A DNA stretch of 63,162 bases, filler included, from Perkinsus chesapeaki ATCC PRA-425 (GCA_013115145.1; 14 parts of 14 records of this genome joined end to end with filler, not necessarily neighbours in it), one strand, 5' to 3'. Positions 12,590-31,370 are shown, numbered from the whole stretch's first letter. A program made the numbers and translations. Notes: generated by a model from the sequence alone, not told the origin.

Positions 12590-12681
12590 ATTAACATTAG
12601 CCTATCTTATACAGTCATACCGCTCCCTTCTATTTATTAACATTAGCCTATCTTATACAGTCATACAGCTCCCTTCTATTT
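12590..12681. repeat. 46-bp tandem duplication at contig start
   Basis: ATTAACATTAGCCTATCTTATACAGTCATA(C/A)... occurs at 12590 and 12636 with one mismatch. Confidence 0.85.
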
Positions 12682-12759
12682 CGTCACCCCATACAGTTCA
12701 GCCGAGTTCCGTGTCCTTTGTTAACTAGCTCCATGCATTGCATCACCATAGCACCTACT

Positions 12760-15700
12760 ACGCACCTGCCATGCTATTGGTTGTAGGGGCAGTTATGCCT
12801 CCAACGGCGGTGCTATCTGGGATGTGGCAGTTGACGAGGAAAGGAAGCTCCTGGCGGTCTCCACCGAGAGCGGTGCGATACCTATGTAGTACCGGAAATC
12901 TAAATGTGGGCGTCCATTGCACGTGCAGATTCTCCCTGGGTGGAGTTGGATCAACGACGCTCACTCGTCTGGGTGAACTAAAGGGAGAGTATCAGAATAG
13001 GAAGAAGGGCGGAAACAGGGCTCTATCAGTTTGCTTCGGGATGGCCAAGGATGCCGCTGCGGGCCAGACCTATCGGACAGTGTTCTCTGGAAACGATAGC
13101 GGAGTTATCAGCGAGTGGCGGGTTGAGATAAAGGAAGCGGAAGACGGTAGTAGGGAAGGCCGCAGGTTCGAATCCCAGGGCATGCATTTCAGGATCTATT
13201 GCTCTCGGGAATACTGTTTGTGTTTCGGATAGCATGCGCATATTGCCGCACACCAATGCTGGTGGAGGAGTCTTGGTATGGACGATAAAGGCATTATCGG
13301 CGGATAGGATTGTGTCGGGTGATTCCTCTGGATGCCTTACACTGTGGGATGTTGATAAACATGTGCAGTTACAGAGGGTAATAAAGAGGATTATGGGGAA
13401 GGGGGATAAGGAGGAATATGAACGGCGGGACTCAGTCGCTGCGTAGTGTATTCTCGTATGACTATTAAAGCATATCAGAGCTTATTATCAATAACTATAC
13501 TCGCCACTATTGAGTCTAATAAGAATGCAAGGCCGCCAGCGGAAGGGCCTCAACAGGAGCCTGGCGCCGAGATATCTTGTTTCCCATCATTCTCTTTTCA
13601 TTGCTTTTTGTTTATATATTTTCCGCCCTTGTAGTTCGCTGTCTATTGGGCCAGTGGAAGTGAGAGGCATGAAGGGCCTCAATCGTTATACTGTGGAGGC
13701 GGCATGGTCTGTTGTGTAGATACGGGAGCATCAGGCTGACATTCTTTGTATGACGGTGCGACGGAGTAAGTTGCCTGTGCTGGGATTCGATTCGGCGACC
13801 TGTGGGGTGACAGACGTGAATTCTTCCGTTAGGCTCGGAGAACCGTGATTTGGCAATCTTCACTACCGGCGTAGACGCTAAGATATCCAAGTTCGCTGAG
13901 ACCGCTAATGGCGACCTCACTGTGAAGACTTCGTAGGATTCTCATTAGTGCCGAAGGATCTGGATGATTATTGAATTAGGTACTTTGTTAACCGTAGAGA
14001 CGTTAACGCTATCTCGCTGCATCCCCAGCGTGAGGTAGAAAGACGATCGTCGGTTGGCGAAGAGTCGGCCATGCGCATGCGTGCAGATACTTGTGTGCGG
14101 CGGCAACGATGGCCAACTAGTTGTTACCTCTACCAAGGCTCAGTTCACTCCTACCAAGCTACCACAGTGGGAAGTTGGTCAGTCGGCGGCACCATTTTAC
14201 GGTTTTTCTATCAGTTTCCACGGCCTGGCATCCTCGCCTTTGGGAGGAGGTGTTGTCCATTGCAGCAGCAGTACAAGGTTGGTGTTGACTGTGTGGAGGA
14301 ACAGCATGAAGATATGGTAAAACACAGCAGCTCGCCTGAAACTTCCGAACATTTCTGCTGGCTTGTCGCGAAACTCTGGCCGATTCTTGCCCCGAGAGAC
14401 AAAATATTTTTTAGCACCGGGAAGACTTGGGATTTTAACAAAATCATTTGACGGTCCTAAAATGGCGTCATTTCCAGGTACATACCGCCAAAGACACCCC
14501 CAGCGGGGTCGGTCAGCTCTGGTGAGTCAGCGGACCTGGCGGTTGGTGTCCAAACGCCGTCCAACATGGCACCGGTATGTCTTCAAGAGATTGCCCTCAG
14601 CTCACCAGATCACATCACAGCTTCGGAGCTATCCAGAGACGGCGAGTACGAACTTACAGGCCTAGTGCTCGCTGGAACCTGTCAATTTAGTTTGATCGTG
14701 TGCTGTACACCGAATGGAGGAGTTCGCTTCTTCTCCTTCGACATTGCCGACGTGGATCTCACTCGTATCGGTGCTGTTGGCGATCTCACCAGTGTGACGG
14801 CGCTGTGTCTAGATGACACTGTGTCGTCGGACAGTATGCCCCTATGGTAGAGCCTTAGCTCATTTAACGTATCGGATCGTCGCTTGGTCAGCTACGCCGC
14901 AGATAGCCAAACGAAGAGAATTTATCGTATTGATTGCTCCACCTCACCGATCGCCAGTGATGCCTGGGGTAGGTGGCCTTGGAGCGCTATCACTACTGGG
15001 TCTAATAGGTACTCCGTTCCGCGGTGTTGTTACGAGGATGGCACTCTCCCCTGCAGTCAACGGCAACAGGAGCTTGGTGGTGGCTGATAGTTATGGTGAT
15101 GTTCATTGGTACGCGGGTTCGATCCCGGCATGTTGTATTTTCATATCCCTCAGCATGACAGTATCGAGCTCGGCCTCGGAGCCTGCCTTCGCTCGAACGT
15201 GCTGTCTACCGCCGCATCGTCGAGGCAAGAAGGCTAAACGTCGTCATGGAGCTATTGAGAATCGCAACACGAACAAGATATTCGCCACATCCATCGGTTT
15301 CAGTAAAGATGGCACTCTATGGTGAGCGGGAAATATGCCACGTGTGGGGTTCGAACCTGCGTGCTTGCCAGCTTCATCACAAGTAGCAATTCTGTATTGC
15401 ACTGCTTCAAGATTGGCGGTGAAGAATTTGAGCTTCTCTGGCACGTCGACATCCGAACTAACATCAACCACGGCAAGCTTCGCCACACCAAGGGCGGCGC
15501 GCATGGCGCTGTGGACACCCGCGTGGAGATACCTGGCCAGATCTTTCACACGGTGCAAGTGGAGTCGATAGAAAGACGAACGAAGAAGGGCCTCCCGACC
15601 AGCGTGAAACTCGCTCTGTAATGAGGAGTGGGGTAAGGACCGCGGCTGGTGTAAGGTGCTCTTGTTAGGTTCGCGGACAGTCTCATTTTGGCCGGTGATA

Positions 15701-16158
15701 TCACCTGCAATCCTACCGCGGCACCGGAAGCTATCTTTACTGTGGTGAAGAGCCGATTTAGCGATGAAAACGAATCCAAGATGTGGATGGGCTCGCACGT
15801 GTTGGGTGGGTCATCGCTTTGCTCAGTCAAGTGCAGTTGATGAAGGCTTGTTCAGGCTGCGCAGCGCTTGATGAGACCCAATGGGTGCATGGCCTCACCG
15901 ACACCATCACCGATAAGCCAGACGACGAGGACGACGAAGCTGGCGAGCCACAAAAGAAGAAGACCAGACGGAGGTCGGGTTCGGTTGGCGGAGGTGAAGT
16001 CACGCGTGGCCTGAGCGGGGATCGGTCTGTGGTGAGTTATCAGTACAGCGGCTTTATGGCTCGTCATGCTGCTTCAGGTGCTTTGCTCAGTCATTGACCA
16101 GAGTGACATTGACCAGCAGCTGCCTCCAGCCTTTGATCGCAAACGCTTCTACCGATAG
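12760..16158 (+). CDS. UTP4: WD40-repeat protein, UTP4/cirhin-like, many short introns (5' end not resolved)
   Basis: Spliced segments include SNGGAIWDVAVDEERKLLAVSTESG, RALSVCF, IVSGDSSGCLTLWD, HQADILCM, IFTTGVDAKI and CGGNDGQLVV. The C-terminus LPPAFDRKRFYR* resembles the Utp4 tail. Confidence 0.7.
13156..13176 (+). pseudogene. tRNA variable-loop/T-loop (B-box) fragment inside 46-nt intron 13147-13192
   Basis: AAGGCCGCAGGTTCGAATCCC. Removing the intron restores the frame between ORFs 12738 and 13234. Confidence 0.45.
13772..13813 (-). pseudogene. Degenerate tRNA 3'-half relic, antisense inside intron 13766-13832
   Basis: The reverse complement CTGTCAC CCCAC AGGTC GCCGA ATCGAAT CCCAGC ACAGGCA follows the layout loop, stem, AGGTC, T arm, acceptor strand. 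It is degenerate. Confidence 0.4.
15112..15129 (+). pseudogene. tRNA T-arm (B-box) fragment inside 45-nt intron 15109-15153
   Basis: CGCGGGTTCGATCCCGGC forms a T arm with 4 of 5 stem pairs, starting 3 nt after the GT donor. Confidence 0.45.
15336..15368 (-). pseudogene. tRNA 3'-end relic (class II Leu/Ser-like), antisense inside 50-nt intron 15322-15371
   Basis: The reverse complement is GCAAGCAC GCAGG TTCGAAC CCCAC ACGTGGC A. Removing the intron restores the frame (GTLCFITSS). Confidence 0.5.
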
Positions 16159-16509
16159 GCCGTCCATTGTTCTTGGTGCTGCTTCGCTCCGCTATAGATG
16201 GACAACACCACTTCACCACAAACGTAAAACTAAAGCAGTCTCTAAAGAGATGATGTTTCTCCTTATCCTTATCCTCTATCCGATTGATGATACATTAACC
16301 ACTACTACTTCCAGCAACTGCTTCTATAACACGTTATCGTTAATGCTAGTATGAGTTGAGCAGTGAATATGGCCGAGGAGACGCTATAGAGGCTATTGCT
16401 CTATCCAGCCTGGATAGATGACGAAACTTGTTAACCCTTCCTTGAATTTAAAGCGCTAAGGCTTATAAACGGTTTAATTTTTGATACTGAATAGTAAGAG
16501 TGGATCAAG

Positions 16510-19500
16510 ATGGCTGAACCATCTTCATTTTCATCAACGGCAACATCAAACTGGCGAGTTAGGAAGACAGAGGCAAAGCAGACGGCTGACGATCTGGTCG
16601 ACCCGGAACTAGCGGCAGCTGTTATAAGGGACTATTTGCTACCGCTCTTCGAAGAGGGGAGTAAACCTATCCACAATGCCAAGGCGAGTGAAACCTCACG
16701 GACCATGCCTTGGGGTGATCTTGCTGTGCAGGCCAGAGCCGGAAGAATGACCGAGGCATCCCTCGCCAACACTTCTGGTTCGATTTTACACTCGGCCACC
16801 TCATCTGTGTTTCACTCACAAGACAGTTGTGGGCGTCGGAGTCCAGGCACGTCCATGCTGGAGGAGATGGTGAGCCGTCTCCTTAGTGGCAGTGAAGAAC
16901 CCGACTGAATGGCGGTGAAACATCTTATATGCTTCCTTAGTCGAGCTCCTGACTGCTCGTCGTAATGTATGCCTCTTCAGCGTTTGGGTGGCGGAAAGCG
17001 TTCGGAGGTTCACGGACCAAAATTTGATTTCCTAGCCGGCACAATTCTAGGAGGCCGCGTATTTCAGCGCTCAAGCTGACTTTTTCTCGAGCTCTATGCG
17101 TACCGCTCCGCCTCAGCTTCTGTCGACGAAGTTGTTGAGAGAAATCACAGAAGCAAGGGAGACGATCACATCCCTTGAGGACAAGCTAGAAACTTCGGAG
17201 GTCCCCGAGTGGTAGCGCACGCGCCTGTGTAAATGAGTCACTCAGTTTGAAAGAAGCGGTATGAAGGAGAAGTACACGGCGAGTCGAAAAAAAGTCCAAG
17301 CCGCGAGTAGAGAGATGAGACTGATGAAGTTCAACAGCGAGGCTTACCGAGTGGGTTCGCTGGCGTTGGTGGTGTGAGAGAATATTATTGTCAGGAGAAG
17401 TCGGAGGAGTTGGAGGCGGAGTGTCGAGGCTTAAGGAGTCAATTGGAGGATATGACTCAGGAAATGAAGAAGACGGCAGAGGCAAGCGCGAAGCTGTCCA
17501 AGGTAATAGCAAGTGCGGATGTATGCAATGGACGTGCCGGGGTTTGAACCCGGGGCCTTCTGCATGCAAAGCAGACGTGATACCACTACACCACACGCCC
17601 TGATGTATATTAACGTCTTCTTCTGCCTGCGCCTTATCCTGACGAATTACAAAAGTCAGTAAGTATGGCAGTGTGAGTCAGAAGCTGTTTGATACCGAAC
17701 GGGAAGTTGAGAGTCTCTCACGGAGGCTACTGGAGAAGGATAACCTAGGCAACATGGCCAAGCTTCAAGCCGAGGTTCTCGGGGAGCAAGTACCACAGCA
17801 CGCATAGCTTGATGAGGCCTTATATGGGCCAGCCCAGTAGGTGAGGGCACTTCATAAGGCAGCGCAAGAATTGGGTGGAGTGAAGGAATGCCAAGATAGA
17901 CTGAGGCACGTTGAAGAGATGGCAGCAATAAGGGTATCACAGGTGAGCTCGGGTGACAGGTGATGGGCTATGACGGTGATGAGAGCAGATAACAGAGTTT
18001 AAAGATGAACTGGAAATTGAAACAGCAAGAGTGGTTGATGAGAGGAATGCTTTGCAGGAAAAAGTGTAAAAGTGATGCTTCATTTTAGCATAGCTTTTCG
18101 AATAGGGAGGAGCTTACAGCATCACAGGACAGGTTGAGTCTTGCGAGGGCACGGTTGCAGACAGAACTCGAGGAGCAGGTGGGTAGAAAATGTCAAAGCG
18201 AACTGGCAGGGGGGTTTGTTAGAAGAAGAAGGCGACGGCACAAATGATAGATTTATTCGAAGAGAAAAATGCAATACGGAAAGAACGAGATAAAATGGAG
18301 AAAAAAACTAAAGTGAGATCGCATACTGAGGGTGCTGCCAAGGTCGAGGGATGCTGGGTGAGGAAGTAGTCATCCAACAACATCGAATGTATAGCAAAAG
18401 CGTTTCTAGTGGAGAGGCATAGTAGAATGTTTGATGAGGAGGAATATATATGAAATACACTTCTTCTTCTTCTGCGCTCAATATCTAATTTCCGCCTATA
18501 TCTACTTCAGGATCTGCAGGAGGACCGGGACAAGCTGAGGCAAAGGTTAAGGAAGTACCATGCCAGGCGGAGACTCTTCGAGATGGAGCATCGGACGTGA
18601 GGCTTGCCATGACAGATTATATTAATGATGCTTTTTGTGGTTACTGCAGATGCAAGAACTGCAATAAGGAGTACATGGAATCAGTTAACTTCAACTGGAG
18701 CTGCCGAACCCACCAGGTGCGAGCATCCAGATCGGACCGGTGCTCTCGTAGCTCTCCCATAGTCAGAGTTCGGTGGTGAGATGTGGTGGTGCTGCGGGAA
18801 GTCTGGCAAAGACGCTACTGGATGCAAGTTCGCCAAGCACGAGTCGAAGGTGAGACTTGAGAGACCTCTTCGAACGACTGGAAAATTTAGGACGACGAGG
18901 AGGATTATGACGATCTTCTGGACGCGGACGAAAACGGCGATGGAAAGGTAGGATGCTCTTGTTGTTGAGGAGGCCGTGAAGGAAACCCTTCAGGAAGGAG
19001 GGAAGAAAAAGAAATCAATGCAAAATGTGAAGTGCTTTTCATGCAAAGAAATGGGGCACAAATCCGAGATGTGCCCGAGAGACCCGAATTTAAGAAGTTT
19101 CACAGGTTGGTGGTGGACGTACTGAAGAAGGTATCGGTTATGATGCAGGTGGATTCATGCCAACTAAGGAGCTGCGGCGGATAGAAATATTACAGACAGC
19201 AGCAGCGACAGGGGGAGGCAGACGAGGAGGCATCACTGCAATAGATCCGGGGAACCAGAAGGAAGAGTATTCAAGCGAGCAAGTGGTGAAAATTGTGAAC
19301 AATCATCTTGGGTGGGTAACTTGTCTTATTGGCTATGTAATGTAGATGAAACTTAACGTCAGATATCAGGCTGTAGAACTGATATCGGAGGAGCATGAGC
19401 TGAGGCTTTTCGAGGAGCTCAGGAGCGGCTTAGACACCAAGGTAAGGAAATGTGATTCACATTATGACAATATCGAGTTATTGTACACTCTGATCGCTTC

Positions 19501-19573
19501 TTGGTGGAACGTTTTTTTAAAGTGGCGACCGCCCTTGGTCCTTGTGCCGCACCCGAATGTCATGCCACCATGA
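16510..19573 (+). CDS. Coiled-coil protein with C-terminal zinc-binding motifs, multi-exon (end approximate)
   Basis: Starts MAEPSS...DPELAAAVIRDYLLPLFEEG, followed by heptad-rich exons (EKSEELEAECRGLRSQLEDMTQEMKK). Then CKNCNKEYMESVNFNWSCRTH...GEMWWCCGKSGKDATGCKFAKH and a CCHC knuckle KCFSCKEMGHKSEMCPRDP. Confidence 0.6.
17529..17600 (-). tRNA. tRNA-Ala(TGC)
   Basis: GGGCGTG TG GTGTAGTGGTATCAC G TCTGC TTTGCAT GCAGA AGGCC CCGGG TTCAAAC CCCGG CACGTCC A. Full cloverleaf with the G3:U70 Ala identity pair. It lies antisense, just downstream of a GT donor at 17503. Confidence 0.95.
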
Positions 19574-19989
19574 GTTTTCGATTCGAAAATATGTGTTGGC
19601 GTAATGTACGCACCATAGAGTTCGCGTAAAGCTCGGCAATGAATCGGTTCATTGCTGTTCTACTGCAAGTATACTCTTTGACTCATTGCGAGATTTTTCC
19701 GTCTGGTATAGCTCCTCAATATGGACACTTCTAGGTCAACGAACGCAAAGATGCTTTGGGTGTTAAAGATGATGTGGCCGATACCGACAGTAGCAGTAAG
19801 TGTCGCTACAGCGCTTGCTGTCCACATCCTCTTCATTCCTCAGGCGGGTTCTCTGATGACATCTCAACTACCCGCGCCCAAGGTCCTGATGAAGTCTGAG
19901 GGGCCAAAGAGTACCAGCGTTAGAAACATCTGTACCCTTATGATGGCCGCATGCCACCATGCCACTGATTGCTTTTCTTACTGCATATT

Positions 19990-22170
19990 TTCTCTACGCC
20001 AGATGAATCTGAATCAATTGCGTTGACCACCAAGTTCCGGGGGATATCCAGCGATCGAGCTGCACAATTATCCGATTCGCATACACGAGGCTGCTATCTT
20101 AGATGCTTTATCGACTTGATGGGAAACGCTGCCCTAGGGTCATTTTCGGAAAGAACTTTAACACTTTACAGAACGAGCCAAGCTAGTCAATCGCATCGCA
20201 GGTCCCCTCCAGTAAGGATATCAAAGAATCGACGATATGTATCAGCACTCGAACGGCAGGCACGATCGCAAACATCGGCCGGCGTTGGTGAGGCGAATCC
20301 CTCTGCGACTGGTGGTAACCCTCTGTGGAGAGCAGCATTAGAGGACGACGCTGAGTCATTACAATCACTTGTGATTGGAGATCGCTTCGATGAAAGCGAA
20401 TGGCCTTCGGTGAGATGCAGTGCCTTCTACCTCGACTGGATCATGCATGGCGTTGTATCAGACACACCGTGAGGAGATCGCTGCCATATTGAACGCGAGG
20501 AATCGTACTGGCGATACTTTACTGATCTTCTCGGCGAAGCACAGCAGTAAGCTTCGACGGAAGCTCAATGCGTAACACTGGCCTCTGTACAGGTCGAAAG
20601 TGTGTTCAAGTCCTAACTCGAATGCGGTGTGATGTGGACGCCAGAGATTCTAACGGCAGAACTGCCTTCCTCATCGCTTGCGCTAGGAATAATATCGATG
20701 TAGCCAAACACTTGTAGGTGCTCAATACGAAGGTCCACTGTCGACCACCGACTAGCAGGTTCCATTGTGCCGCCTGCGACCCTGACATAGCAGACGAACG
20801 CGGTTTCACAGGTTTCGCCCTCGCGCTGCTATTTGGGCACGTTGAGATAGTGCGATGGTGGCTAACGAGAGTAAGGCGAGATGTCTCTTATATCGCAGGG
20901 ATGTTAATTGGGCTAAGGTGTCCAGATGTACAGCCACCGATGATATTCCCAGTCTGCTCGGTCCCAAAACCTGGAAGCCTTTCCTCCTGGCAGTTCACTT
21001 GAAGAATATCGAACTGGTAAGGTTGGACCTATGTAAGTCGTTAGTTGGCTCAGGTCAAGACAATAGCTAAGTTCGTCGGAAAGGGCTCAATTAACGGGAA
21101 GGATACGGACGGTCGTAGTGCTCTCTATTTGGCTGCCTCAAATGGGGATCTTGACATGGCGAAGTGAATCGGAGGGCCAGGTCGGTTGTGCACAAAAGCC
21201 GTGGTAGGTGCATATTGGCACTGGGAGCTGACAAAACACAGATGGCCGATTCCACGGCTAACGGGATGACGCCACTCTGGATTGCCGCATGTAAGAGATC
21301 CACTTAGTTCCGTGGGATTGCGGAATGCTCGGGTCAGGTGGAGGCCATTCTAGCTTCGTAAGCTGGCTCCTGAAGTCGATCAGTTCTGACTCCGCTGTGA
21401 ACCAAGTGGACTCGCGGGGTGCCACTCCCTTGTAAAGATCACCAAGAAAGGAATTAATGACATAAACGTGCGCAGGTACATTGCGGTGGAGAACGGCCAC
21501 TTGGAGGTGGTCGAAATCCTTCTAGAGCATGGCGCTGATGTTAACAGGACGCCTTATCAGGTAAGCAGGATACTGAGTAAGGGTTCGGGAAGCACTATCT
21601 GATGGTAGACATGTTCTCCAACTGTGCGCGCATGTGTTGAAGGCAACTTGGTTATGTTGCAAGCTTTGATGAAGACTGGTAAAGTGCATAGGAATGACAG
21701 GATGATGATGGACGCGGCAAGGTAAGACCTTGACCGTCTCGTGCATTTCACGTTGGAGTACGTATATGAAACTAAACTCCAACGCGTCCGCTGGTGAAAG
21801 TCTCATTCAGTGGTAGCGTGCTCTTTTGCCAGGTTTAATGGCCATGATGAAGTCCTTATTTGGATACAAGCCACGCGTGGATACTTCGCTGCATTGCACT
21901 ATGCTCGCGAGCTCACGTTTGACCAGGTGAGCCCCGACTGATTCACAACTACACAACTGTAAACCATTCCAGGTCTTGGCCTGTCTCCGTGGATCCGATC
22001 CGAGGCAATCGGATATACTGGCGCGAATCCCTACATCAAAGAGTGGCCTGTTGGGACTGAGTCCGCTAGCATTAGCGCAGCAGTGCGATGGAAGCCTCCT
22101 GGTATGGCTGCTCGACTGGCGGAAAGCTTGATCATCAATCGTAAATTCTCCTGATAACTCTGGTTTAGGA
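19990..22170 (+). CDS. Ankyrin-repeat protein, multi-exon (boundaries approximate)
   Basis: Exonic ANK motifs include RGFTGFALALLFGHVEIVRW, YLAASNGDLDMAK, NGMTPLWIAA and IAVENGHLEVVEILLEHGADVN. Confidence 0.7.
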
Positions 22171-23239
22171 TGATGAAAAAATGGAGATAATAAGGAGGGC
22201 TGCAGGGTCATGGTCACCAAGAACGCACTGGTTGTTCGACTCCGAGGCGAGAAAATTTGCGTAAGGCGACGTTGTGCTTCTCAGAATTCCGATGGTCAGG
22301 GTTTTACTAGCAAGAGTTGGCCGACGGCTTGCCTGTATTAAGGCTCAGCCTACTGTACCTGAGGAGGGAAGATTTTACCTGCCTTACGATGTGTGGAGCA
22401 TGTACATAATGCCGATGGCGGTGTCAAGTACGTTGGACCTCTCGCATGGTGCGCGCCATCTCATGTGCAGGAACTCCCTTCGAACTGAATGATGAAGAGT
22501 ATCATTTATGGGTTTATCCCAACTTATACGATGACACCACTAGCTGACCAAAGCATTTTATTCCAGTATCGTTCCTTGGTTCTCGCTTGTCCCATTACAA
22601 ATCTCATTCAAATGGGTGACGTTCCCCATCGGCGCCTGTTGCGCTCTCAGTTTGATGCCGCCTCTGTATAACAATGCTGGTGGGCCATGACACATACATA
22701 TGCTGGGCGAGATTCACACAGTACTCGCAATAATTATCACACGTCAACAAGGGGCTTTCAGCGCCTTCCCCGTTGCCAACATAGGTTAAATACTAACGAG
22801 TTTTACCTGCTGTGCATACGTACTAGTCAACTGGAACGGCAGTATGTCTGTTTCTCATTGGAGACAAGCTGAACTCACTAGTGTGGAGTGTGAGTGGACT
22901 TTGTCTGTATGTAGAGTGAATAAGAGCAAATTGTAGGATAACTTCAACGTAAGCGAAATGAGCAACTGTGATGGACAGTGAAAATATAAAGATAGAGCCT
23001 GTGTTACACAGATAATCCTCTCACGCTCACCGAGCTTTAATCAAATATTAGAACAACTAAACTGGTGCATGCAGTACGATTTAGTCGGTGCTGCTCAAGA
23101 AACTAACAAGTATGGATGATCCGACAGACTTTGATGAGCTCAATCTAAACTCATAGGTCTTGGCACGATCATTCGGCCGACAATTCGGCCTTGTCGTCCA
23201 TCATATTGTCGTTACAAGCCCCCGCGCTACCACTGGGGA

Positions 23240-23317
23240 TAACACGACCTGCCCTACGTTGGAGAGGCCTAGGTCAACCAAATGTACACCGAGACCTTGA
23301 GCCGAGATGGCTACAGC
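23240..23317 (-). ncRNA. Spliced-leader RNA-like sequence (gene, pseudogene or relic; 3' extent guessed)
   Basis: 23317-23296 reads GCTGTAGCCATCTCGGCTCAAG, 19/22 identical to the Perkinsus-type SL ACCGTAGCCATCTTGGCTCAAG. It is followed directly by a GT donor and an ATTTGG Sm-like motif about 12 nt downstream. Confidence 0.55.
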
Positions 23318-23574
23318 GCAGGTTCGAAACCCCTAGGAGGTCTGATACGGCTCTGTTGTCACGGGGATTCCCGTTAGCGGCCCACGAGACCTCACTTCGA
23401 CTCAACCTTCGAACGCCAAGCGTTTTTGCATTTTCGGTGCTTGCTCTCCCAAAGACTCAAAAAACGGTTCGTCGACAAGATACTACCCTACCTTGCCTGG
23501 AGCGTACTTCAGAAGGGTACAGTACGCGTCATCTAGAACGCGCGCTTCTTGACAATTGATTTATATCTCAAGTA

Positions 23575-25067
23575 TAGCGAGTTTTCACTTAATTCCTCCG
23601 CCATATATCTTAGAAATGTCTCTTGTCATGGAATCCAAGTCCCGAATCCGAACACCGGAAACACTTTTTATGTGCATTTTCGAGCCTCTGTGCGCCTTTT
23701 CATGCCCCGCGTACGGCTCACTAAGTACCACTGAACAGAGGCACAGTAGCATCGGAGTATCTGGAAGACCTGGGGTTTCGAAGAGGCGTCGAATATGGAA
23801 AGGAAGTATAGTTAGAGTAGCTAGAAGTGTCCCCTCCTATGCACCAAGTATTCGTGATGCTCTACGTTGCGGCTCCCGACACTACCCGAGTAAGTTTGGT
23901 CGAGCATACTCTTGTACCAGCTCTAAGATAAAGGTCCCGAATACCGGGTCTGTAAGTCTGTAAGTCTGTAGGCTACTCGTAGCTCTCCTCCGAACTCAGC
24001 GATGAACTTGACGAAGTTCGGCAACCGAACTTCGGTTACCAACTTAACTTAATGTTTACCGCTTTTGTAAAGCTACCCGGCAACCCGTCGAGAAGCGAGA
24101 TCATACTAGGAGAATCGACTCTCGCCAGCGACAGAGGGCATTCCGGCGCGAGTAATTTGGTGGAGAGCTGGAGGCGAACGACAGGACTTACTGAGCGCTA
24201 CAGAACCGGTGGTCGACCAGCAGTCGAGGCAGGGGTCTGAAACCACAGATACACGGAGGTCTGCTATCGACAGACTATCCCCGACTAGCTGGTTTGGGAG
24301 GAACCAGGCTATCAGAAATAAAAGAGAATAGGGCCTATGAAAGACATTAAAAGCCTTGCACTCTTTGTCGAAGACTTTTTGATGGTTCCCGTATCTGTTT
24401 AATCGACTTGAGGCACAAAAATGATTAACATGACTGTCAGTCAGACTGTGGTGGTCGGTAATATCATCTCCATACGAGCGAGCAGCTGGCTGTGGCATCG
24501 CACTGAATCGAGCCCCGGTGCTCGGAGGCCTTGAGCCCAGGCCCTGGGGCCCAGACTGGACGTGGCACTCATAGAACTGAGGGTGACTTCAAACTTGAAA
24601 TTCACAAGGGGTGTCCTCATCTGAAGGGTATCTCGGTGTACTATTCGAGGTTTTAGGATCCTTCATGTTTACGCTATTTCTGAGGTCCTCGGGCTAAGGA
24701 GCAGGCGTCTCATTGTGTTAACTGGTGTGGGAATCGTTTGAAACTTTCGAATTAAAAGTAGAAGAGGAAGTCAGAGGAAGAGGCAGGAGGTGGAATGGCT
24801 ATAGTATAGCCACGATACCGCTCTGGCATTACTCATTCCGCATGAATACTCTGCGTTAGAGGTCGTCGGGTACATGGCTACAGCAAACGAGTCCGAAATG
24901 GGTCAGCCAAAGTTGTGTGGGCCGGTGACCGCGGGGCATGAAAAGGCGCGCAGAGGCTCGAAAATGTACATAAAAAGTGTTTCAGGTGTTCGGATTCGGC
25001 AACTTGGATTCCATGACAAGAGACATTTCTAAGGTATATGGCGGAGGAATTAAGTGAAAACTCGCTA
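23575..25067. mobile_element. Putative non-autonomous TIR DNA transposon (about 1.5 kb)
   Basis: About 140-bp inverted repeats lie at 23573-23711 and 24930-25069, with few differences. The ends read TA|TAGCGAG...CTCGCTA|TA, compatible with a TA target-site duplication. I see no transposase ORF inside. Confidence 0.6.
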
Positions 25068-25243
25068 TAATAACAGTTCAATCTATTGGACCCTGTCAAA
25101 TGGCGCGCGCGGAGGGAAGATCAACGCATGCGTACAACTGAAANNNNNNNNNNNNNNNNNNNNNNNNNNNNNNNNNNNNNNNNNNNNTTAATTAATTAAN
25201 NNNNNNNNNNNNNNNNNNNNNNNNNNNNNNNNNNNNNNNNNNN

Positions 25244-29149: not shown

Positions 29150-31370
29150 CATTTTCCTGTCCGCCAAGAACGCCTCAACTTACTGAAGTGAGCTCTCCTC
29201 GCATCTGCCTCGTTCTCCGGTGGCGGAAGTCCGTATCCTCGTCGAGCGATATAGTCCTTCGCACATCTACTTGAGAAATGCACGAGTCCGCTGTGTAGGA
29301 GGCCTACTTCGGATGCCACCATTGAACCTTGCACTTATCCCCTCTATCACAGCCGACCATATACGAGCCGTCATCCGGCTTCTTACAGACGCACCATAAC
29401 TAAGAGGCAATCAGAGCGATAGTGCTATTTTGCTTATCAGTGCTAGGATGTATAATAAAGCGTCTCAAGTAGGAAAGGTGAGCGCGAGAATGAACGCAAT
29501 CTTCAACAGAAATTCGGCAACCATATGCAGGCGGCGGCCACGGTAATATATTCTCACCTCGATCGCCGGATCTGGACTTCCAGCCGTTTCGGTGTCGTTG
29601 ATGGAGTCCGTGCCCTACAGTGAGGAATGCATGCCAGCAGTTATCACCACCTCAGGGAGACTCACTGCTTCACTCTTCGGATCGGTCGGGGATGAGGCCG
29701 CCGATGACGACGCCAATTTGACCTTCTTTGCAGCCGAAATCAATGGAGTCTCCTGAGCAATATTCATTTGCCGCATCCAAGGGACAGCTCAAGTTCTACA
29801 AAGAGATGTATTTCTGTTCAGATGTATACCTCTATCCAATTACCCTTGCCAAGAGATCACAAGCGGTCAGGGACCGAGTACACTAAATATTGCTCCGGCT
29901 TGCCGAGTTCAGAAATGCCCGGAGCTCACTCCCAGCGCTCACCATGCGCGTGATTTTCAGTACTGTCTCGAGATAGCCGATTAGGCTTATGTCAGCTGCC
30001 TCCCTTTGTCCTAAATACACTTCTCACCAAAATACACTTTTTGGTGCTGGGAAATTTCCGATAAATTTTAAAAAGGATTTTTTGGCCCTCGCCAACGTGT
30101 GTAGGTTCCTGAAGGCAAGAGTAGAGGAAGTCGATTTCCAGTCAGCACTAGCATCCCCATCGGGCCCCTTACATCTTCGATTTCACTAGTATTAGCCTCC
30201 TTCTGCTGGGCTGCTATCTGAAACGAACCGCATCTCCGAAGCGAAAGGTCCCCGGTTCGAATCCCACGGAAGGCTACCTCATCTTCCTCTATTGCAGCCG
30301 CAGTTGCCACTACCTCAGCGACCGACCGGAGCTCCATCTTGTCCTGAAATTTCATTACACCTTCCGAAGGCGACTTATCGCGGACATCTCACACACGTAC
30401 GCGAATGACAGAGCGTCGGACTTCTCCGTGGTGAAAATCTAATATACTGCCTGCCGGCGCATTAGTATAGAGTAATCAGATTTAAAATGGGATAATTGAC
30501 AAATGTTGACGTATTATCTCACTCAATGTCTCGTAGCAGATATTATACAACTAAATAGCCGTGTGCTTGCTTTACGTAAATACCCTCTGCGAGGTTCGAA
30601 CCCGCGACCTTCCGCTTTAAAACCGTATATCTTACCTCCTCAACTGTGACAAGTATTTTCTGGACGACCGCCAAAACTTCCTTCCGAAGGGACAACAGCT
30701 CGTCTTCTCCAGCCTCGATCTTTAGCAGTAACTCCGTAGCTTCGGCCTTCAATTTGTTGCTTCTCGCCGCACCAATTTCAAGATACCTGAATTATCACCC
30801 GGCAAGCTATACACCTACATTTTCTGATCAGTGTGGGAAAATGTGCACGTGGCTTGCTACATCAATAGTCGAGCTTAAGAAAAATTTGAGGAAAATATGG
30901 AAAATACCGAACAGCCAAGAACGCACTTTTCGCCCATAAGTCCCGTATAAAATGGTGAGTAAATCCGGCAAGGTCCTCACCGGTTGAGGAGGAAGAAGCC
31001 GACAGATATTCCCACACTGTTCCTGAGCAACCAAGAACGTTCTCAATATTTTTTCAATGTAATATTAATATTTATTTTATTATTCCTGTCACTTTCCTTA
31101 AATTCTCCTGCAGCAACCAGCCAGGAGCGGTATCATTTCAAAAGGACCGTACTTTGTTGTCCGTTGCCAACAACGAGAGTCATAATAACCACTCCTCCTC
31201 CGATTACCTTCTATTAGCGTCATCCAGCTCAGCTTCCACTACATCCCCCCGATGAGATAGGAAGTGTATTAAATCGAGCTCCCGCCGTATGATAGGACCG
31301 CTCACATACGTTAGATACCTGATACACTTGATCGGTCGTGAAATTTTTTTTGAAAATACCATTGATGCTT
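29150..31370 (-). CDS. Hypothetical multi-exon protein with coiled-coil segments (boundaries approximate)
   Basis: Exon-like segments with GT-AG borders, e.g. AEATELLLKIEAGEDELLSLRKEVLAVVQKILVTVEE|LYNICYETL and ELRSVAEVVATAAAIEEDE|IAAQQKEANTSEIED. Confidence 0.4.
30231..30275 (+). pseudogene. tRNA-Arg(CCG)-like 3' half filling most of a putative 60-nt minus-strand intron (30218-30277)
   Basis: CTCCGAA (CCG anticodon loop) GCGAA AGGTC CCCGG TTCGAAT CCCAC GGAAGGC. The 5' half is missing, and the GT donor sits 2-3 nt beyond the acceptor strand. Confidence 0.6.
30581..30618 (-). pseudogene. tRNA 3' half (Arg-like) inside 85-nt intron 30551-30635
   Basis: Minus strand AA GCGGA AGGTC GCGGG TTCGAAC CTCGC AGAGGGT A has an intact T arm and acceptor strand. 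There is no 5' half. Confidence 0.65.

What the first reader, a model, noticed from the sequence alone, without database searches (positions are those of the whole stretch)
13147..15371. Short spliceosomal introns built around tRNA pieces: four in one gene
Four of the 45-67 nt introns in the UTP4-like gene contain tRNA T-arm/B-box sequence. Two are sense (13147-13192 AAGGCCGCAGGTTCGAATCCC; 15109-15153 GCGGGTTCGATCCCGGC). Two are antisense and include an acceptor-like 3' end (13766-13832; 15322-15371 TGCCACGTGTGGGGTTCGAACC). Three of the four introns are supported by reading-frame restoration; the 45-nt one is in-frame. Together with the clearer relics at 30218-30635 and the tRNAs at 17529 and 34337, this looks like a series from intact intronic tRNA genes to half-tRNAs to bare B-boxes. 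Inferred explanations are tRNA or tRNA-SINE insertions that create or colonise introns, rapid birth and death of intronic tRNA genes, or retained TFIIIC-binding B-boxes. I know of no description of this in Perkinsus but cannot search.
Basis: partly seen in the sequence, partly recalled or inferred. Interest (0 to 1): 0.85.

Follow-up and report, generated by a model that had tools for sequence, protein, structure and literature searches.

The report
Conserved half-tRNA modules in short introns
Four tiny introns of one Perkinsus gene each carry the back half of a tRNA gene, and its polymerase-III promoter motif (the B-box) is almost unchanged in a second Perkinsus species in which ordinary intron sequence is scrambled, so these are maintained elements rather than decaying junk.

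Summary
The piece is a whole 12,554-bp Perkinsus chesapeaki contig.

- **tRNA likeness.** Each of the four introns holds a ~37-nt module. The consensus of the modules reads as variable loop, T-arm with B-box, acceptor 3' strand, discriminator A, then a T-run. That is the 3' half of a tRNA gene. Two modules are sense and two antisense.
- **Chance.** GGTTCGANNCC occurs 4 times against 0.05-0.1 expected.
- **Independent check.** A sequence model built only from the modules finds the real tRNA-Ala genes in register.
- **Not tRNAs.** There is no 5' half, the T-stems are unpaired, and ARAGORN and Rfam give no tRNA hit.
- **New here: conservation.** P. olseni has the same modules in the orthologous introns. 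Four-fold sites differ at 59% and 9 of 15 intron pairs are unalignable. Yet the B-box core is 93% identical (p about 3e-13).

This argues against neutral decay or rapid turnover. It favours a retained DNA-level element, most plausibly a TFIIIC-type solo B-box. That function is untested.

In about 38 kb of Perkinsus DNA the modules cluster only in this gene. RNA support for the four introns is lacking.

The parts
12788..16155 (+). Host gene: cirhin/UTP4-like WD40 protein, 5'-partial CDS with 16 GT-AG introns.
   Evidence: Exact spliced mapping of P0002. Pfam shows only generic WD40 propeller matches. RNA contigs join an upstream exon to 12787.
13147..13192 (+). Intron 2 (46 nt, phase 1) with a sense tRNA 3'-half module at 13155-13191. 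The B-box GGTTCGAATCC is at 13165-13175 and a T-run starts at tRNA position 74.
   Evidence: The P. olseni ortholog is L001 9878-9988 (111 nt) with an identical 13-nt core; similarity z = 4.4.
13766..13832 (+). Intron 4 (67 nt, phase 1) with an antisense module on the minus strand at 13766-13803. It runs from the anticodon-loop-like CTGTCAC to the discriminator. The degenerate B-box GAATCGAATCC is at 13783-13793 (minus).
   Evidence: The P. olseni ortholog is L001 10307-10385; a 42-nt ungapped block is about 74% identical, z = 5.8.
15109..15153 (+). Intron 12 (45 nt, in frame, phase 2) with a sense module at 15107-15142. The B-box GGTTCGATCCC is at 15116-15126 and TTTT starts at position 74.
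   Evidence: The P. olseni ortholog is L001 11605-11654 (50 nt, not in frame), z = 4.6.
15322..15371 (+). Intron 13 (50 nt, phase 2) with an antisense module at 15330-15366 (minus). The B-box GGTTCGAACCC is at 15347-15357 (minus), with an acceptor-like end ...GTGGCA.
   Evidence: The P. olseni ortholog is L001 11823-11873, z = 4.7.
17529..17600 (-). Intact tRNA-Ala(TGC) gene, antisense in an intron of the neighbouring gene. It serves as the comparator, being a complete intronic tRNA gene.
   Evidence: ARAGORN and Rfam at 68 bits. An orthologous copy lies in the syntenic P. olseni intron. The module model hits its 3' half in register, E = 0.003. The unit is very high-copy in DNA runs.
23317..23340 (+). 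Marginal solo B-box segment (GGTTCGAAACC at 23321-23331) outside any evident gene.
   Evidence: The module model gives E = 0.14. There is a 21-nt similarity to a solo B-box segment downstream of P. olseni cirhin, L001 13275-13295.

Best explanation
Four genuine short spliceosomal introns of the P. chesapeaki cirhin/UTP4-like gene each consist largely of the 3' half of a former tRNA gene. The half comprises the variable loop, the T-arm with its B-box, the acceptor 3' strand, the discriminator and a T-run. Two modules are in the sense orientation and two are antisense.

They derive from tRNA genes that sat in, or were inserted into, these introns before P. chesapeaki and P. olseni diverged. Perkinsus has hundreds of dispersed tRNA gene copies, and some intact ones are intronic. 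The modules are no longer tRNA genes.

The B-box core, and more weakly the acceptor-side flank, has been kept by purifying selection while the neutral sequence around it saturated. This holds in either orientation and no RNA fold is conserved, so the constraint most likely acts on DNA. The most plausible form is a solo B-box bound by TFIIIC, like an 'extra-TFIIIC' site, placed inside a Pol II gene.

Shown: intron status by annotation, frame and orthology; tRNA-gene origin; cross-species conservation. Inferred: purifying selection. Speculative: TFIIIC binding and any regulatory role.

The confidence value covers the whole statement. I put the shown parts at about 0.85-0.9 and the TFIIIC part alone at about 0.35.
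For: - **Exact gene model**.
- **B-box excess:** 4 hits against 0.05-0.1 expected.
- **Module consensus:** GAAnAGGTCGCGGGTTCGAATCCCACnnGnGGCATTTTT, a canonical tRNA-gene 3' half with terminator-like T-run.
- **Independent check:** the sequence-only model R1 built from the modules finds three real tRNA-Ala genes in the correct register, E = 0.003-0.005.
- **Orthology:** the introns share position and phase in P. olseni.
- **Neutral background:** 4-fold sites are 59% different, JC distance 1.17. Nine of 15 intron pairs show no similarity (z about 0), while all four module introns have z = 4.4-5.8. Fisher p = 0.011.
- **Where the conservation sits:** identity is 93% at positions 52-62 (41/44, p = 3e-13), 61% at 63-73 (p = 0.005), and near baseline further 5'. 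Baseline is 32-38%.
- **No RNA fold:** no significant structure or covariation.
- **Literature:** solo B-boxes bind TFIIIC without TFIIIB or Pol III (PMC5391098). P. marinus has more than 500 copies of five tRNA types (PMC3706591).
- **Copy number:** the tRNA-Ala unit has about 170-590 times single-copy depth.
Against: - No binding, expression or small-RNA data exist, so TFIIIC is a guess.
- Only two species could be compared.
- Among four P. olseni copies 1.4-5.4% apart, the B-box core is not significantly less variable: 2/44 variable sites against 56/577 in other intron sequence. One copy carries T54C and G52A changes, so the constraint is not absolute.
- Intron 4's core already departs from the B-box consensus at two positions, yet its whole 42-nt block is conserved. 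This suggests that more than a B-box may be constrained there.
- Part of the T-run regularity could simply be the intron's polypyrimidine tract, or an A-rich donor region on the other strand.
- The core is near-palindromic (GGNNTCGANNCC), so a different dimeric DNA-binding factor is possible.
- Modules were found in only one gene in about 38 kb.
Confidence: 0.55

Rival explanations
1. Neutral relics in a fast birth-and-death series. Intronic tRNA genes die and shrink to half-tRNAs and then to bare B-boxes, with no function.
For: - An intact intronic tRNA-Ala lies next door.
- The modules lack 5' halves and paired T-stems.
- A 5'-half-like piece in intron 17204-17248 is absent from the P. olseni ortholog.
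- B-box variants segregate within P. olseni.
Against: - The same four modules are in the orthologous introns of a species whose 4-fold sites are 59% different.
- Core identity is 93% against a 32-41% neutral expectation (p about 3e-13).
- Other introns of the same gene are unalignable.
Confidence: 0.08
2. Intron creation by a mobile half-tRNA element, introner-like. A tRNA-derived insert brought or completed the splice signals, with the T-run serving as the polypyrimidine tract, and so made these introns.
For: - The module fills most of each intron.
- The T-run begins right after the discriminator and leads into the 3' AG in the sense cases.
- tRNA units are dispersed in hundreds of copies as bare 72-nt units.
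- Transposon-derived introns are known in other protists (PMC11282704, PMC7789003).
Against: - No near-identical copies, no shared flanks and no target-site duplications.
- P. olseni intron 1 is 111 nt, with the module only at its 3' end, so the intron is not the same thing as the module.
- Any gain pre-dates the species split, so it cannot be tested here.
- This idea does not explain the conservation.
Confidence: 0.12
3. The conserved motif acts in the pre-mRNA, for example as a splicing enhancer or branch region, or as a T-loop-like site for a tRNA-modifying enzyme. It does not act on DNA.
For: - In the two sense introns the motif lies 21-31 nt upstream of the 3' splice site.
- The motif GUUCNANNC resembles a T-loop. 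That this is the site recognised by TruB/Pus4-type enzymes is my own knowledge and was not tested.
Against: - Two modules are antisense, so the RNA does not carry the T-loop sequence.
- No significant fold (z about 0) and no covariation.
- The T-stems are unpaired.
- The other 12 introns of the gene lack the motif.
Confidence: 0.1
4. The similarity is maintained by ectopic gene conversion from the very abundant tRNA genes, without selection on the intron copies.
For: - There are hundreds of tRNA copies (PMC3706591).
- DNA-run depth is raised in the bins holding module introns, with foreign contigs matching from 13161 and from 15112 onward.
Against: - Conversion should restore complementary T-stems and whole-half similarity.
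- Instead only the core is kept, the stems are unpaired and the flanks differ between species.
- The available homology, about 11-13 nt, is very short for conversion.
Confidence: 0.06
5. The constrained element is a near-palindromic site (GGNNTCGANNCC) for some other DNA-binding factor. The tRNA origin is then incidental.
For: - The core is quasi-palindromic and works in both orientations.
- Intron 4's core deviates from the B-box consensus yet is conserved.
Against: - Orientation-specific flanks fit tRNA geometry: CCCA at positions 61-64 in 6 of 8 modules, G(C/T)A at 71-73, and a T-run at 74.
- The model hits real tRNAs in register.
- The B-box is the best-known reader of exactly this sequence.
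Confidence: 0.12

Closest known systems
Extra-TFIIIC (ETC) sites / solo B-boxes (yeasts, human, Dictyostelium)
   Same: An isolated B-box consensus without a functional tRNA gene, conserved between species. Solo B-boxes are known to bind TFIIIC without TFIIIB or Pol III (PMC5391098).
   Different: ETC sites are described mainly in intergenic or promoter-proximal DNA. Here four lie inside 45-67-nt spliceosomal introns of one Pol II gene, in both orientations. They still carry the acceptor-side flank and T-run of a tRNA gene. No occupancy data exist.
Intronic tRNA genes and tRNA pseudogenes
   Same: tRNA-gene sequence housed in introns of protein-coding genes. An intact example, tRNA-Ala at 17529-17600, is in the neighbouring gene and is also positionally conserved in P. 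olseni.
   Different: Only the 3' half remains. It fails ARAGORN and Rfam, and it is conserved at the core far beyond neutral expectation.
Transposon-derived introns (introners) and tRNA-derived SINEs
   Same: Intron sequence that derives from a repeated, Pol III-related unit.
   Different: SINE heads keep the A-box and the B-box, whereas these modules keep the 3' half only. There are no multi-copy near-identical family members, no TSDs and no recent activity. The positions are old and shared by two species.
Split or permuted tRNA genes (Nanoarchaeum; Cyanidioschyzon). Comparison from my own knowledge.
   Same: Free-standing tRNA halves that break near the anticodon loop.
   Different: The T-stems are not complementary, the acceptor strands have no partner, and no 5' halves were found. 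These cannot yield a tRNA.

Membership tests
Functional tRNA gene | Full cloverleaf detected by tRNA finders or a covariance model. | tested here: not met
   ARAGORN finds only tRNA-Ala in the piece. Rfam RF00005 gives no hit on the region, nor on introns 13147-13192 and 13766-13832 searched alone. The other two introns were covered only by the whole-region scan.
Functional tRNA gene | Paired T-stem and a 5' half with an A-box. | tested here: not met
   T-stems have 2-3 of 5 possible pairs. The sequence 5' of position ~40 is intron start or exon, and no A-box lies upstream.
tRNA-gene-derived sequence (3' half) | B-box consensus GGTTCGANNCC. | tested here: met
   Three exact matches and one with 2 mismatches in P. 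chesapeaki. Three exact and one with 1 mismatch in P. olseni. Overall 4 hits against 0.05-0.17 expected.
tRNA-gene-derived sequence (3' half) | tRNA geometry beyond the B-box: variable loop AGGTC, 11 nt from C62 to the discriminator A, then a T-run. | tested here: met
   Consensus of the 8 modules. A run of at least three T starts within the first three bases after the discriminator in 7 of 8 modules (six exactly at position 74; Pc4 reads TATTT). Model R1 finds true tRNA-Ala 3' halves in register.
ETC-type TFIIIC site | Solo B-box conserved between species. | tested here: met
   41/44 core positions are identical between P. chesapeaki and P. olseni against 0.41 neutral.
ETC-type TFIIIC site | TFIIIC occupancy without TFIIIB or Pol III. 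| not testable with these tools
   No ChIP or CUT&RUN data are available.
Introner / mobile-element-derived intron family | Many near-identical copies forming introns at unrelated sites; TSDs or TIRs. | tested here: not met
   No repeats among the modules in self-BLAST. The R1 search of about 38 kb finds none outside this gene. The sample is small and the whole genome was not searched.
Spliceosomal intron | GT-AG borders, frame restoration, and removal in mRNA. | tested here: inconclusive
   GT-AG borders, the exact protein model and orthologous positions are met. The RNA runs were too small to show splicing of these four introns.

The most novel reading that the evidence does not exclude
tRNA-gene 3' halves have been exapted as conserved TFIIIC landing sites (solo B-boxes) inside the spliceosomal introns of a ribosome-biogenesis gene (UTP4/cirhin). 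This would couple the Pol III machinery, or tRNA-gene-type nuclear positioning, to expression of a Pol I-pathway factor. It would be a class of intragenic, intron-embedded ETC elements that may be widespread in the tRNA-rich Perkinsus genomes.
Probability: 0.25. Interest if true: 0.75.

Novelty: new variant of a known kind. Interest (0 to 1): 0.6.

Why it matters
Solo B-boxes and intronic tRNA genes are both known. I found no description of half-tRNA modules filling minimal spliceosomal introns, nor of such modules conserved across species whose neutral sites are saturated (literature searches).

If they bind TFIIIC, Perkinsus would offer a compact natural system for studying how Pol III factors act inside Pol II genes, for example as roadblocks, insulators or positioning signals.

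It would also show how an over-abundant tRNA gene family seeds new cis-elements in a parasite of commercial shellfish.

The result also gives a clear comparative-genomics test that can be run genome-wide straight away.

Tried and rejected
- **RNA-seq check of the introns.** Only two RNA runs of about 5 Mb were offered. They cover only the first exon in the window.
- **Third Perkinsus species.** All three routes gave nothing: a search with a protein fragment, a search with the ORF spanning introns 12-13, and a metagenome scan with the ortholog alignment.
- **Rfam tRNA model on introns 13147-13192 and 13766-13832 searched alone.** There is no tRNA hit. Only the 11-nt core matches T-loops of other families.
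- **RNA structure.** Fold z-scores are about 0 and there is no useful covariation. An RNA-fold function was therefore rejected.
- **'Splice donor GT is the anticodon GTA of a tRNA-Tyr half'.** I considered this and dropped it. GTAG is a common donor in this gene (7 of 16), and the true P. olseni intron 1 is 111 nt with the module at its 3' end.
- **Exonised 5' half upstream of intron 13147.** There is no A-box and no acceptor complement (inspection).
- **Within-species polymorphism as a test of constraint.** Underpowered, with 2/44 variable core sites against 56/577 in other intron sequence.
- **Contig walking for a genome-wide sample.** One step yielded only 3.4 kb of new DNA, so I abandoned it.

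Full report
**What the window is.** The usable piece (12590-25143) is 12,554 bases. That is exactly the length of the contig carrying GenBank protein KAF4653545.1, 'cirhin, partial [Perkinsus chesapeaki]' (P0002). Pfam sees only generic WD40 propellers. The cirhin/UTP4 label is therefore the depositor's and was not tested further here.

**Are the four segments introns?**
- P0002 maps exactly onto the + strand from 12788 to 16155 only if 16 GT-AG introns are removed.
- The P. olseni ortholog (P0001 on L001; P0007 on L002) has introns at the same codon and phase for all 14 positions covered by P0001. P0007 adds the ortholog of intron 13147-13192.
- The in-frame 45-nt intron corresponds to a 50-nt intron in P. 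olseni. That intron would break the frame if retained.
- Direct RNA evidence is almost absent. Two tiny RNA runs give one contig each. These join an upstream exon to 12787 and end at or just past 12885, the first annotated donor.
- Splicing of the four introns is therefore inferred from annotation, reading frame and orthology.

**Is the tRNA likeness real?**
- GGTTCGANNCC occurs 4 times in the piece against 0.05-0.10 expected. Three hits are in the introns: 13165+, 15116+ and 15347-. Intron 13766-13832 carries a weaker antisense core, GAATCGAATCC.
- I anchored the four P. chesapeaki modules and four P. olseni modules on the B-box and read them in tRNA orientation. They then align without gaps.
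- Their consensus is GAAnAGGTCGCGGGTTCGAATCCCACnnGnGGCATTTTT. This reads as variable loop AGGTC, T-stem, T-loop, T-stem, seven acceptor bases, discriminator A, then a T-run.
- In 7 of 8 modules a run of at least three T starts within three bases of the discriminator, six of them exactly at position 74, even though positions 63-73 differ between species.
- A sequence-only model built from the eight modules (R1) found the real tRNA-Ala genes of the window, L001 and L002 in the right orientation and register, with E = 0.003-0.005. This is independent support for a tRNA-gene origin.
- The modules are nevertheless not tRNAs. ARAGORN and the Rfam tRNA model find nothing. The T-stems have 2-3 of 5 pairs. 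There is no 5' half. Each module spans only from about the anticodon loop or variable loop to the discriminator.

**The new result: deep conservation.**
- P. chesapeaki and P. olseni cirhin proteins are 74% identical. Four-fold degenerate sites differ at 59% (Jukes-Cantor distance 1.17), which is essentially saturated.
- Of the 15 orthologous intron pairs, 9 show no similarity beyond shuffles (z between -1.6 and 1.1). Two have conserved 3' ends. All four module introns are clearly alignable, with z = 4.4-5.8. Fisher's test for 4/4 against 2/11 gives p = 0.011.
- Conservation by position, in the B-box-anchored ungapped alignment:

| tRNA positions | Identity between species | Note |
|---|---|---|
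| 52-62 (B-box core) | 93% (41/44) | binomial p = 3e-13 against the JC expectation of 0.41 |
| 63-73 | 61% | p = 0.005 |
| 44-51 | 50% | not significant |
| 32-43 | 33% | near baseline |
| Other introns (baseline) | 32-38% | |

- The modules are therefore older than the species split, and their core evolves far more slowly than neighbouring intron sequence. This contradicts a neutral decay series, rapid turnover and lineage-specific insertion.
- Intron 13766-13832 is notable. Its whole 42-nt antisense block is about 74% identical without indels. The block runs from the anticodon-loop-like CTGTCAC (CTATCAT in P. olseni) to ...GGCA.

**Limits of the constraint argument.**
- Four P. olseni copies (L001-L004, 1.4-5.4% apart) show 9.7% variable sites in ordinary intron sequence (56/577).
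- The module flanks show 10.5% (8/76) and the core 4.5% (2/44). The difference is not significant.
- One copy (L004) carries T54C in intron 1 and G52A in intron 2 (module numbering). The constraint is therefore not absolute, or some alleles are degenerating.
- No third species could be obtained.

**What level does the constraint act on?**
- The introns have no unusual RNA stability (z about 0, apart from one at -1.7). There is no informative covariation.
- The T-stems are unpaired, and two of the four modules are antisense to the pre-mRNA.
- This points to a DNA-level, orientation-tolerant, sequence-specific reader.
- The best-known reader of GGTTCGANNCC is TFIIIC. Solo B-boxes ('extra-TFIIIC' sites) bind TFIIIC without TFIIIB or Pol III in other eukaryotes (PMC5391098).
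- The core is nearly palindromic, so another dimeric factor cannot be excluded.

**Where did the modules come from?**
- Perkinsus is unusually rich in tRNA genes. More than 500 copies of five types are reported in P. marinus (PMC3706591).
- In DNA runs the 72-nt tRNA-Ala unit at 17529-17600 reaches about 170-590 times single-copy word depth. Unrelated flanks begin exactly at its ends.
- That intact gene sits antisense in an intron of the neighbouring gene, and it is also positionally conserved in P. olseni.
- Ancestral intronic tRNA genes, or inserts, that lost their 5' halves are therefore the simplest origin.
- An introner-like origin is not excluded for the distant past, but I found nothing to support it. 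There are no near-identical copies and no TSDs. P. olseni intron 1 is 111 nt with the module only at its 3' end.

**How general is it?**
- R1 was searched with filters off over the window, L001, L002 and the extra part of L005. This is about 38 kb of non-redundant Perkinsus DNA holding several intron-rich genes.
- Apart from the cirhin modules and the true tRNAs, it found only two marginal solo segments, at window 23317-23340 and L001 13275-13303.
- On present evidence this is a cluster in one gene. Whether it is a genome-wide class remains the key open question.

**Literature.** Full-text searches found no description of tRNA-derived or B-box-bearing spliceosomal introns in Perkinsus or elsewhere. 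The library is incomplete.

**Verdict.** The segments are real introns carrying tRNA-gene 3' halves. They are conserved elements rather than a decay series. This is a new variant of known kinds (solo B-box/ETC-like sites; intronic tRNA relics), and its function is untested.

Noticed in passing
window 23573-25069: A ~1.5-kb element bounded by 140-nt terminal inverted repeats that are 95.7% identical (23573-23711 and 24930-25069). The TIRs start TATAGCGAG... and may be flanked by TA. It looks like a non-autonomous DNA transposon.
   Followed up: partly
window 17208, 21809 (+) and 23225 (-): The D-loop-like 10-mer AGTGGTAGCG occurs 3 times against 0.09 expected. Two copies are in putative introns of the neighbouring genes (about 17204-17248 and about 21715-21833). 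The 17204 intron's P. olseni ortholog has no such sequence, so these 5'-half-like pieces are not conserved in the way the B-box modules are.
   Followed up: partly
window 14072-14214: The 3' ends of introns 14035-14086 (GCATGCGTGCAG) and 14167-14214 (TTTACGGTTTTTCTATCAG) are conserved in P. olseni, with z = 3.6 and 5.2. DNA runs show extra contigs matching just 14072-14214, with unrelated flanks. This may be a repeated or otherwise constrained exon-plus-intron segment. Unexplained.
   Followed up: no
window 17529-17600: The tRNA-Ala(TGC) unit has word depth of about 14,400 and 33,800 against single-copy depths of about 86 and 57 in two DNA runs. Loose ends fall exactly at 17529 and 17600. This indicates hundreds of dispersed bare 72-nt copies without shared flanks.
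   Followed up: partly
window 12590-12787: The piece starts inside an intron. A ~47-nt unit (attaacattagcctatcttatacagtcata...) is directly repeated at 12590-12690. RNA contigs splice an upstream exon, not on this contig, to 12787.
   Followed up: no
L001 10175-10260 (P. olseni; ortholog of window intron 13378-13719): This intron contains CCGATTCGATCTGTGG, a further degenerate antisense T-loop-like stretch. It may be a fifth, more decayed module. The 342-nt P. chesapeaki intron has only a faint counterpart.
   Followed up: no
L001 8843-12662 versus L002 1-2984: In assembly GCA_013115135.1 the P. olseni cirhin gene is annotated as three separate models (123, 122 and 623 aa). Another assembly has one 695-aa model. 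P. olseni also has about 5.5 kb, including a Glyco_transf_17 gene, inserted between cirhin and the next gene relative to P. chesapeaki.
   Followed up: partly
window 15501-15562: One DNA run holds a second contig with 10 differences in 62 nt of exon sequence at about half depth. This is consistent with a divergent second haplotype in P. chesapeaki.
   Followed up: no
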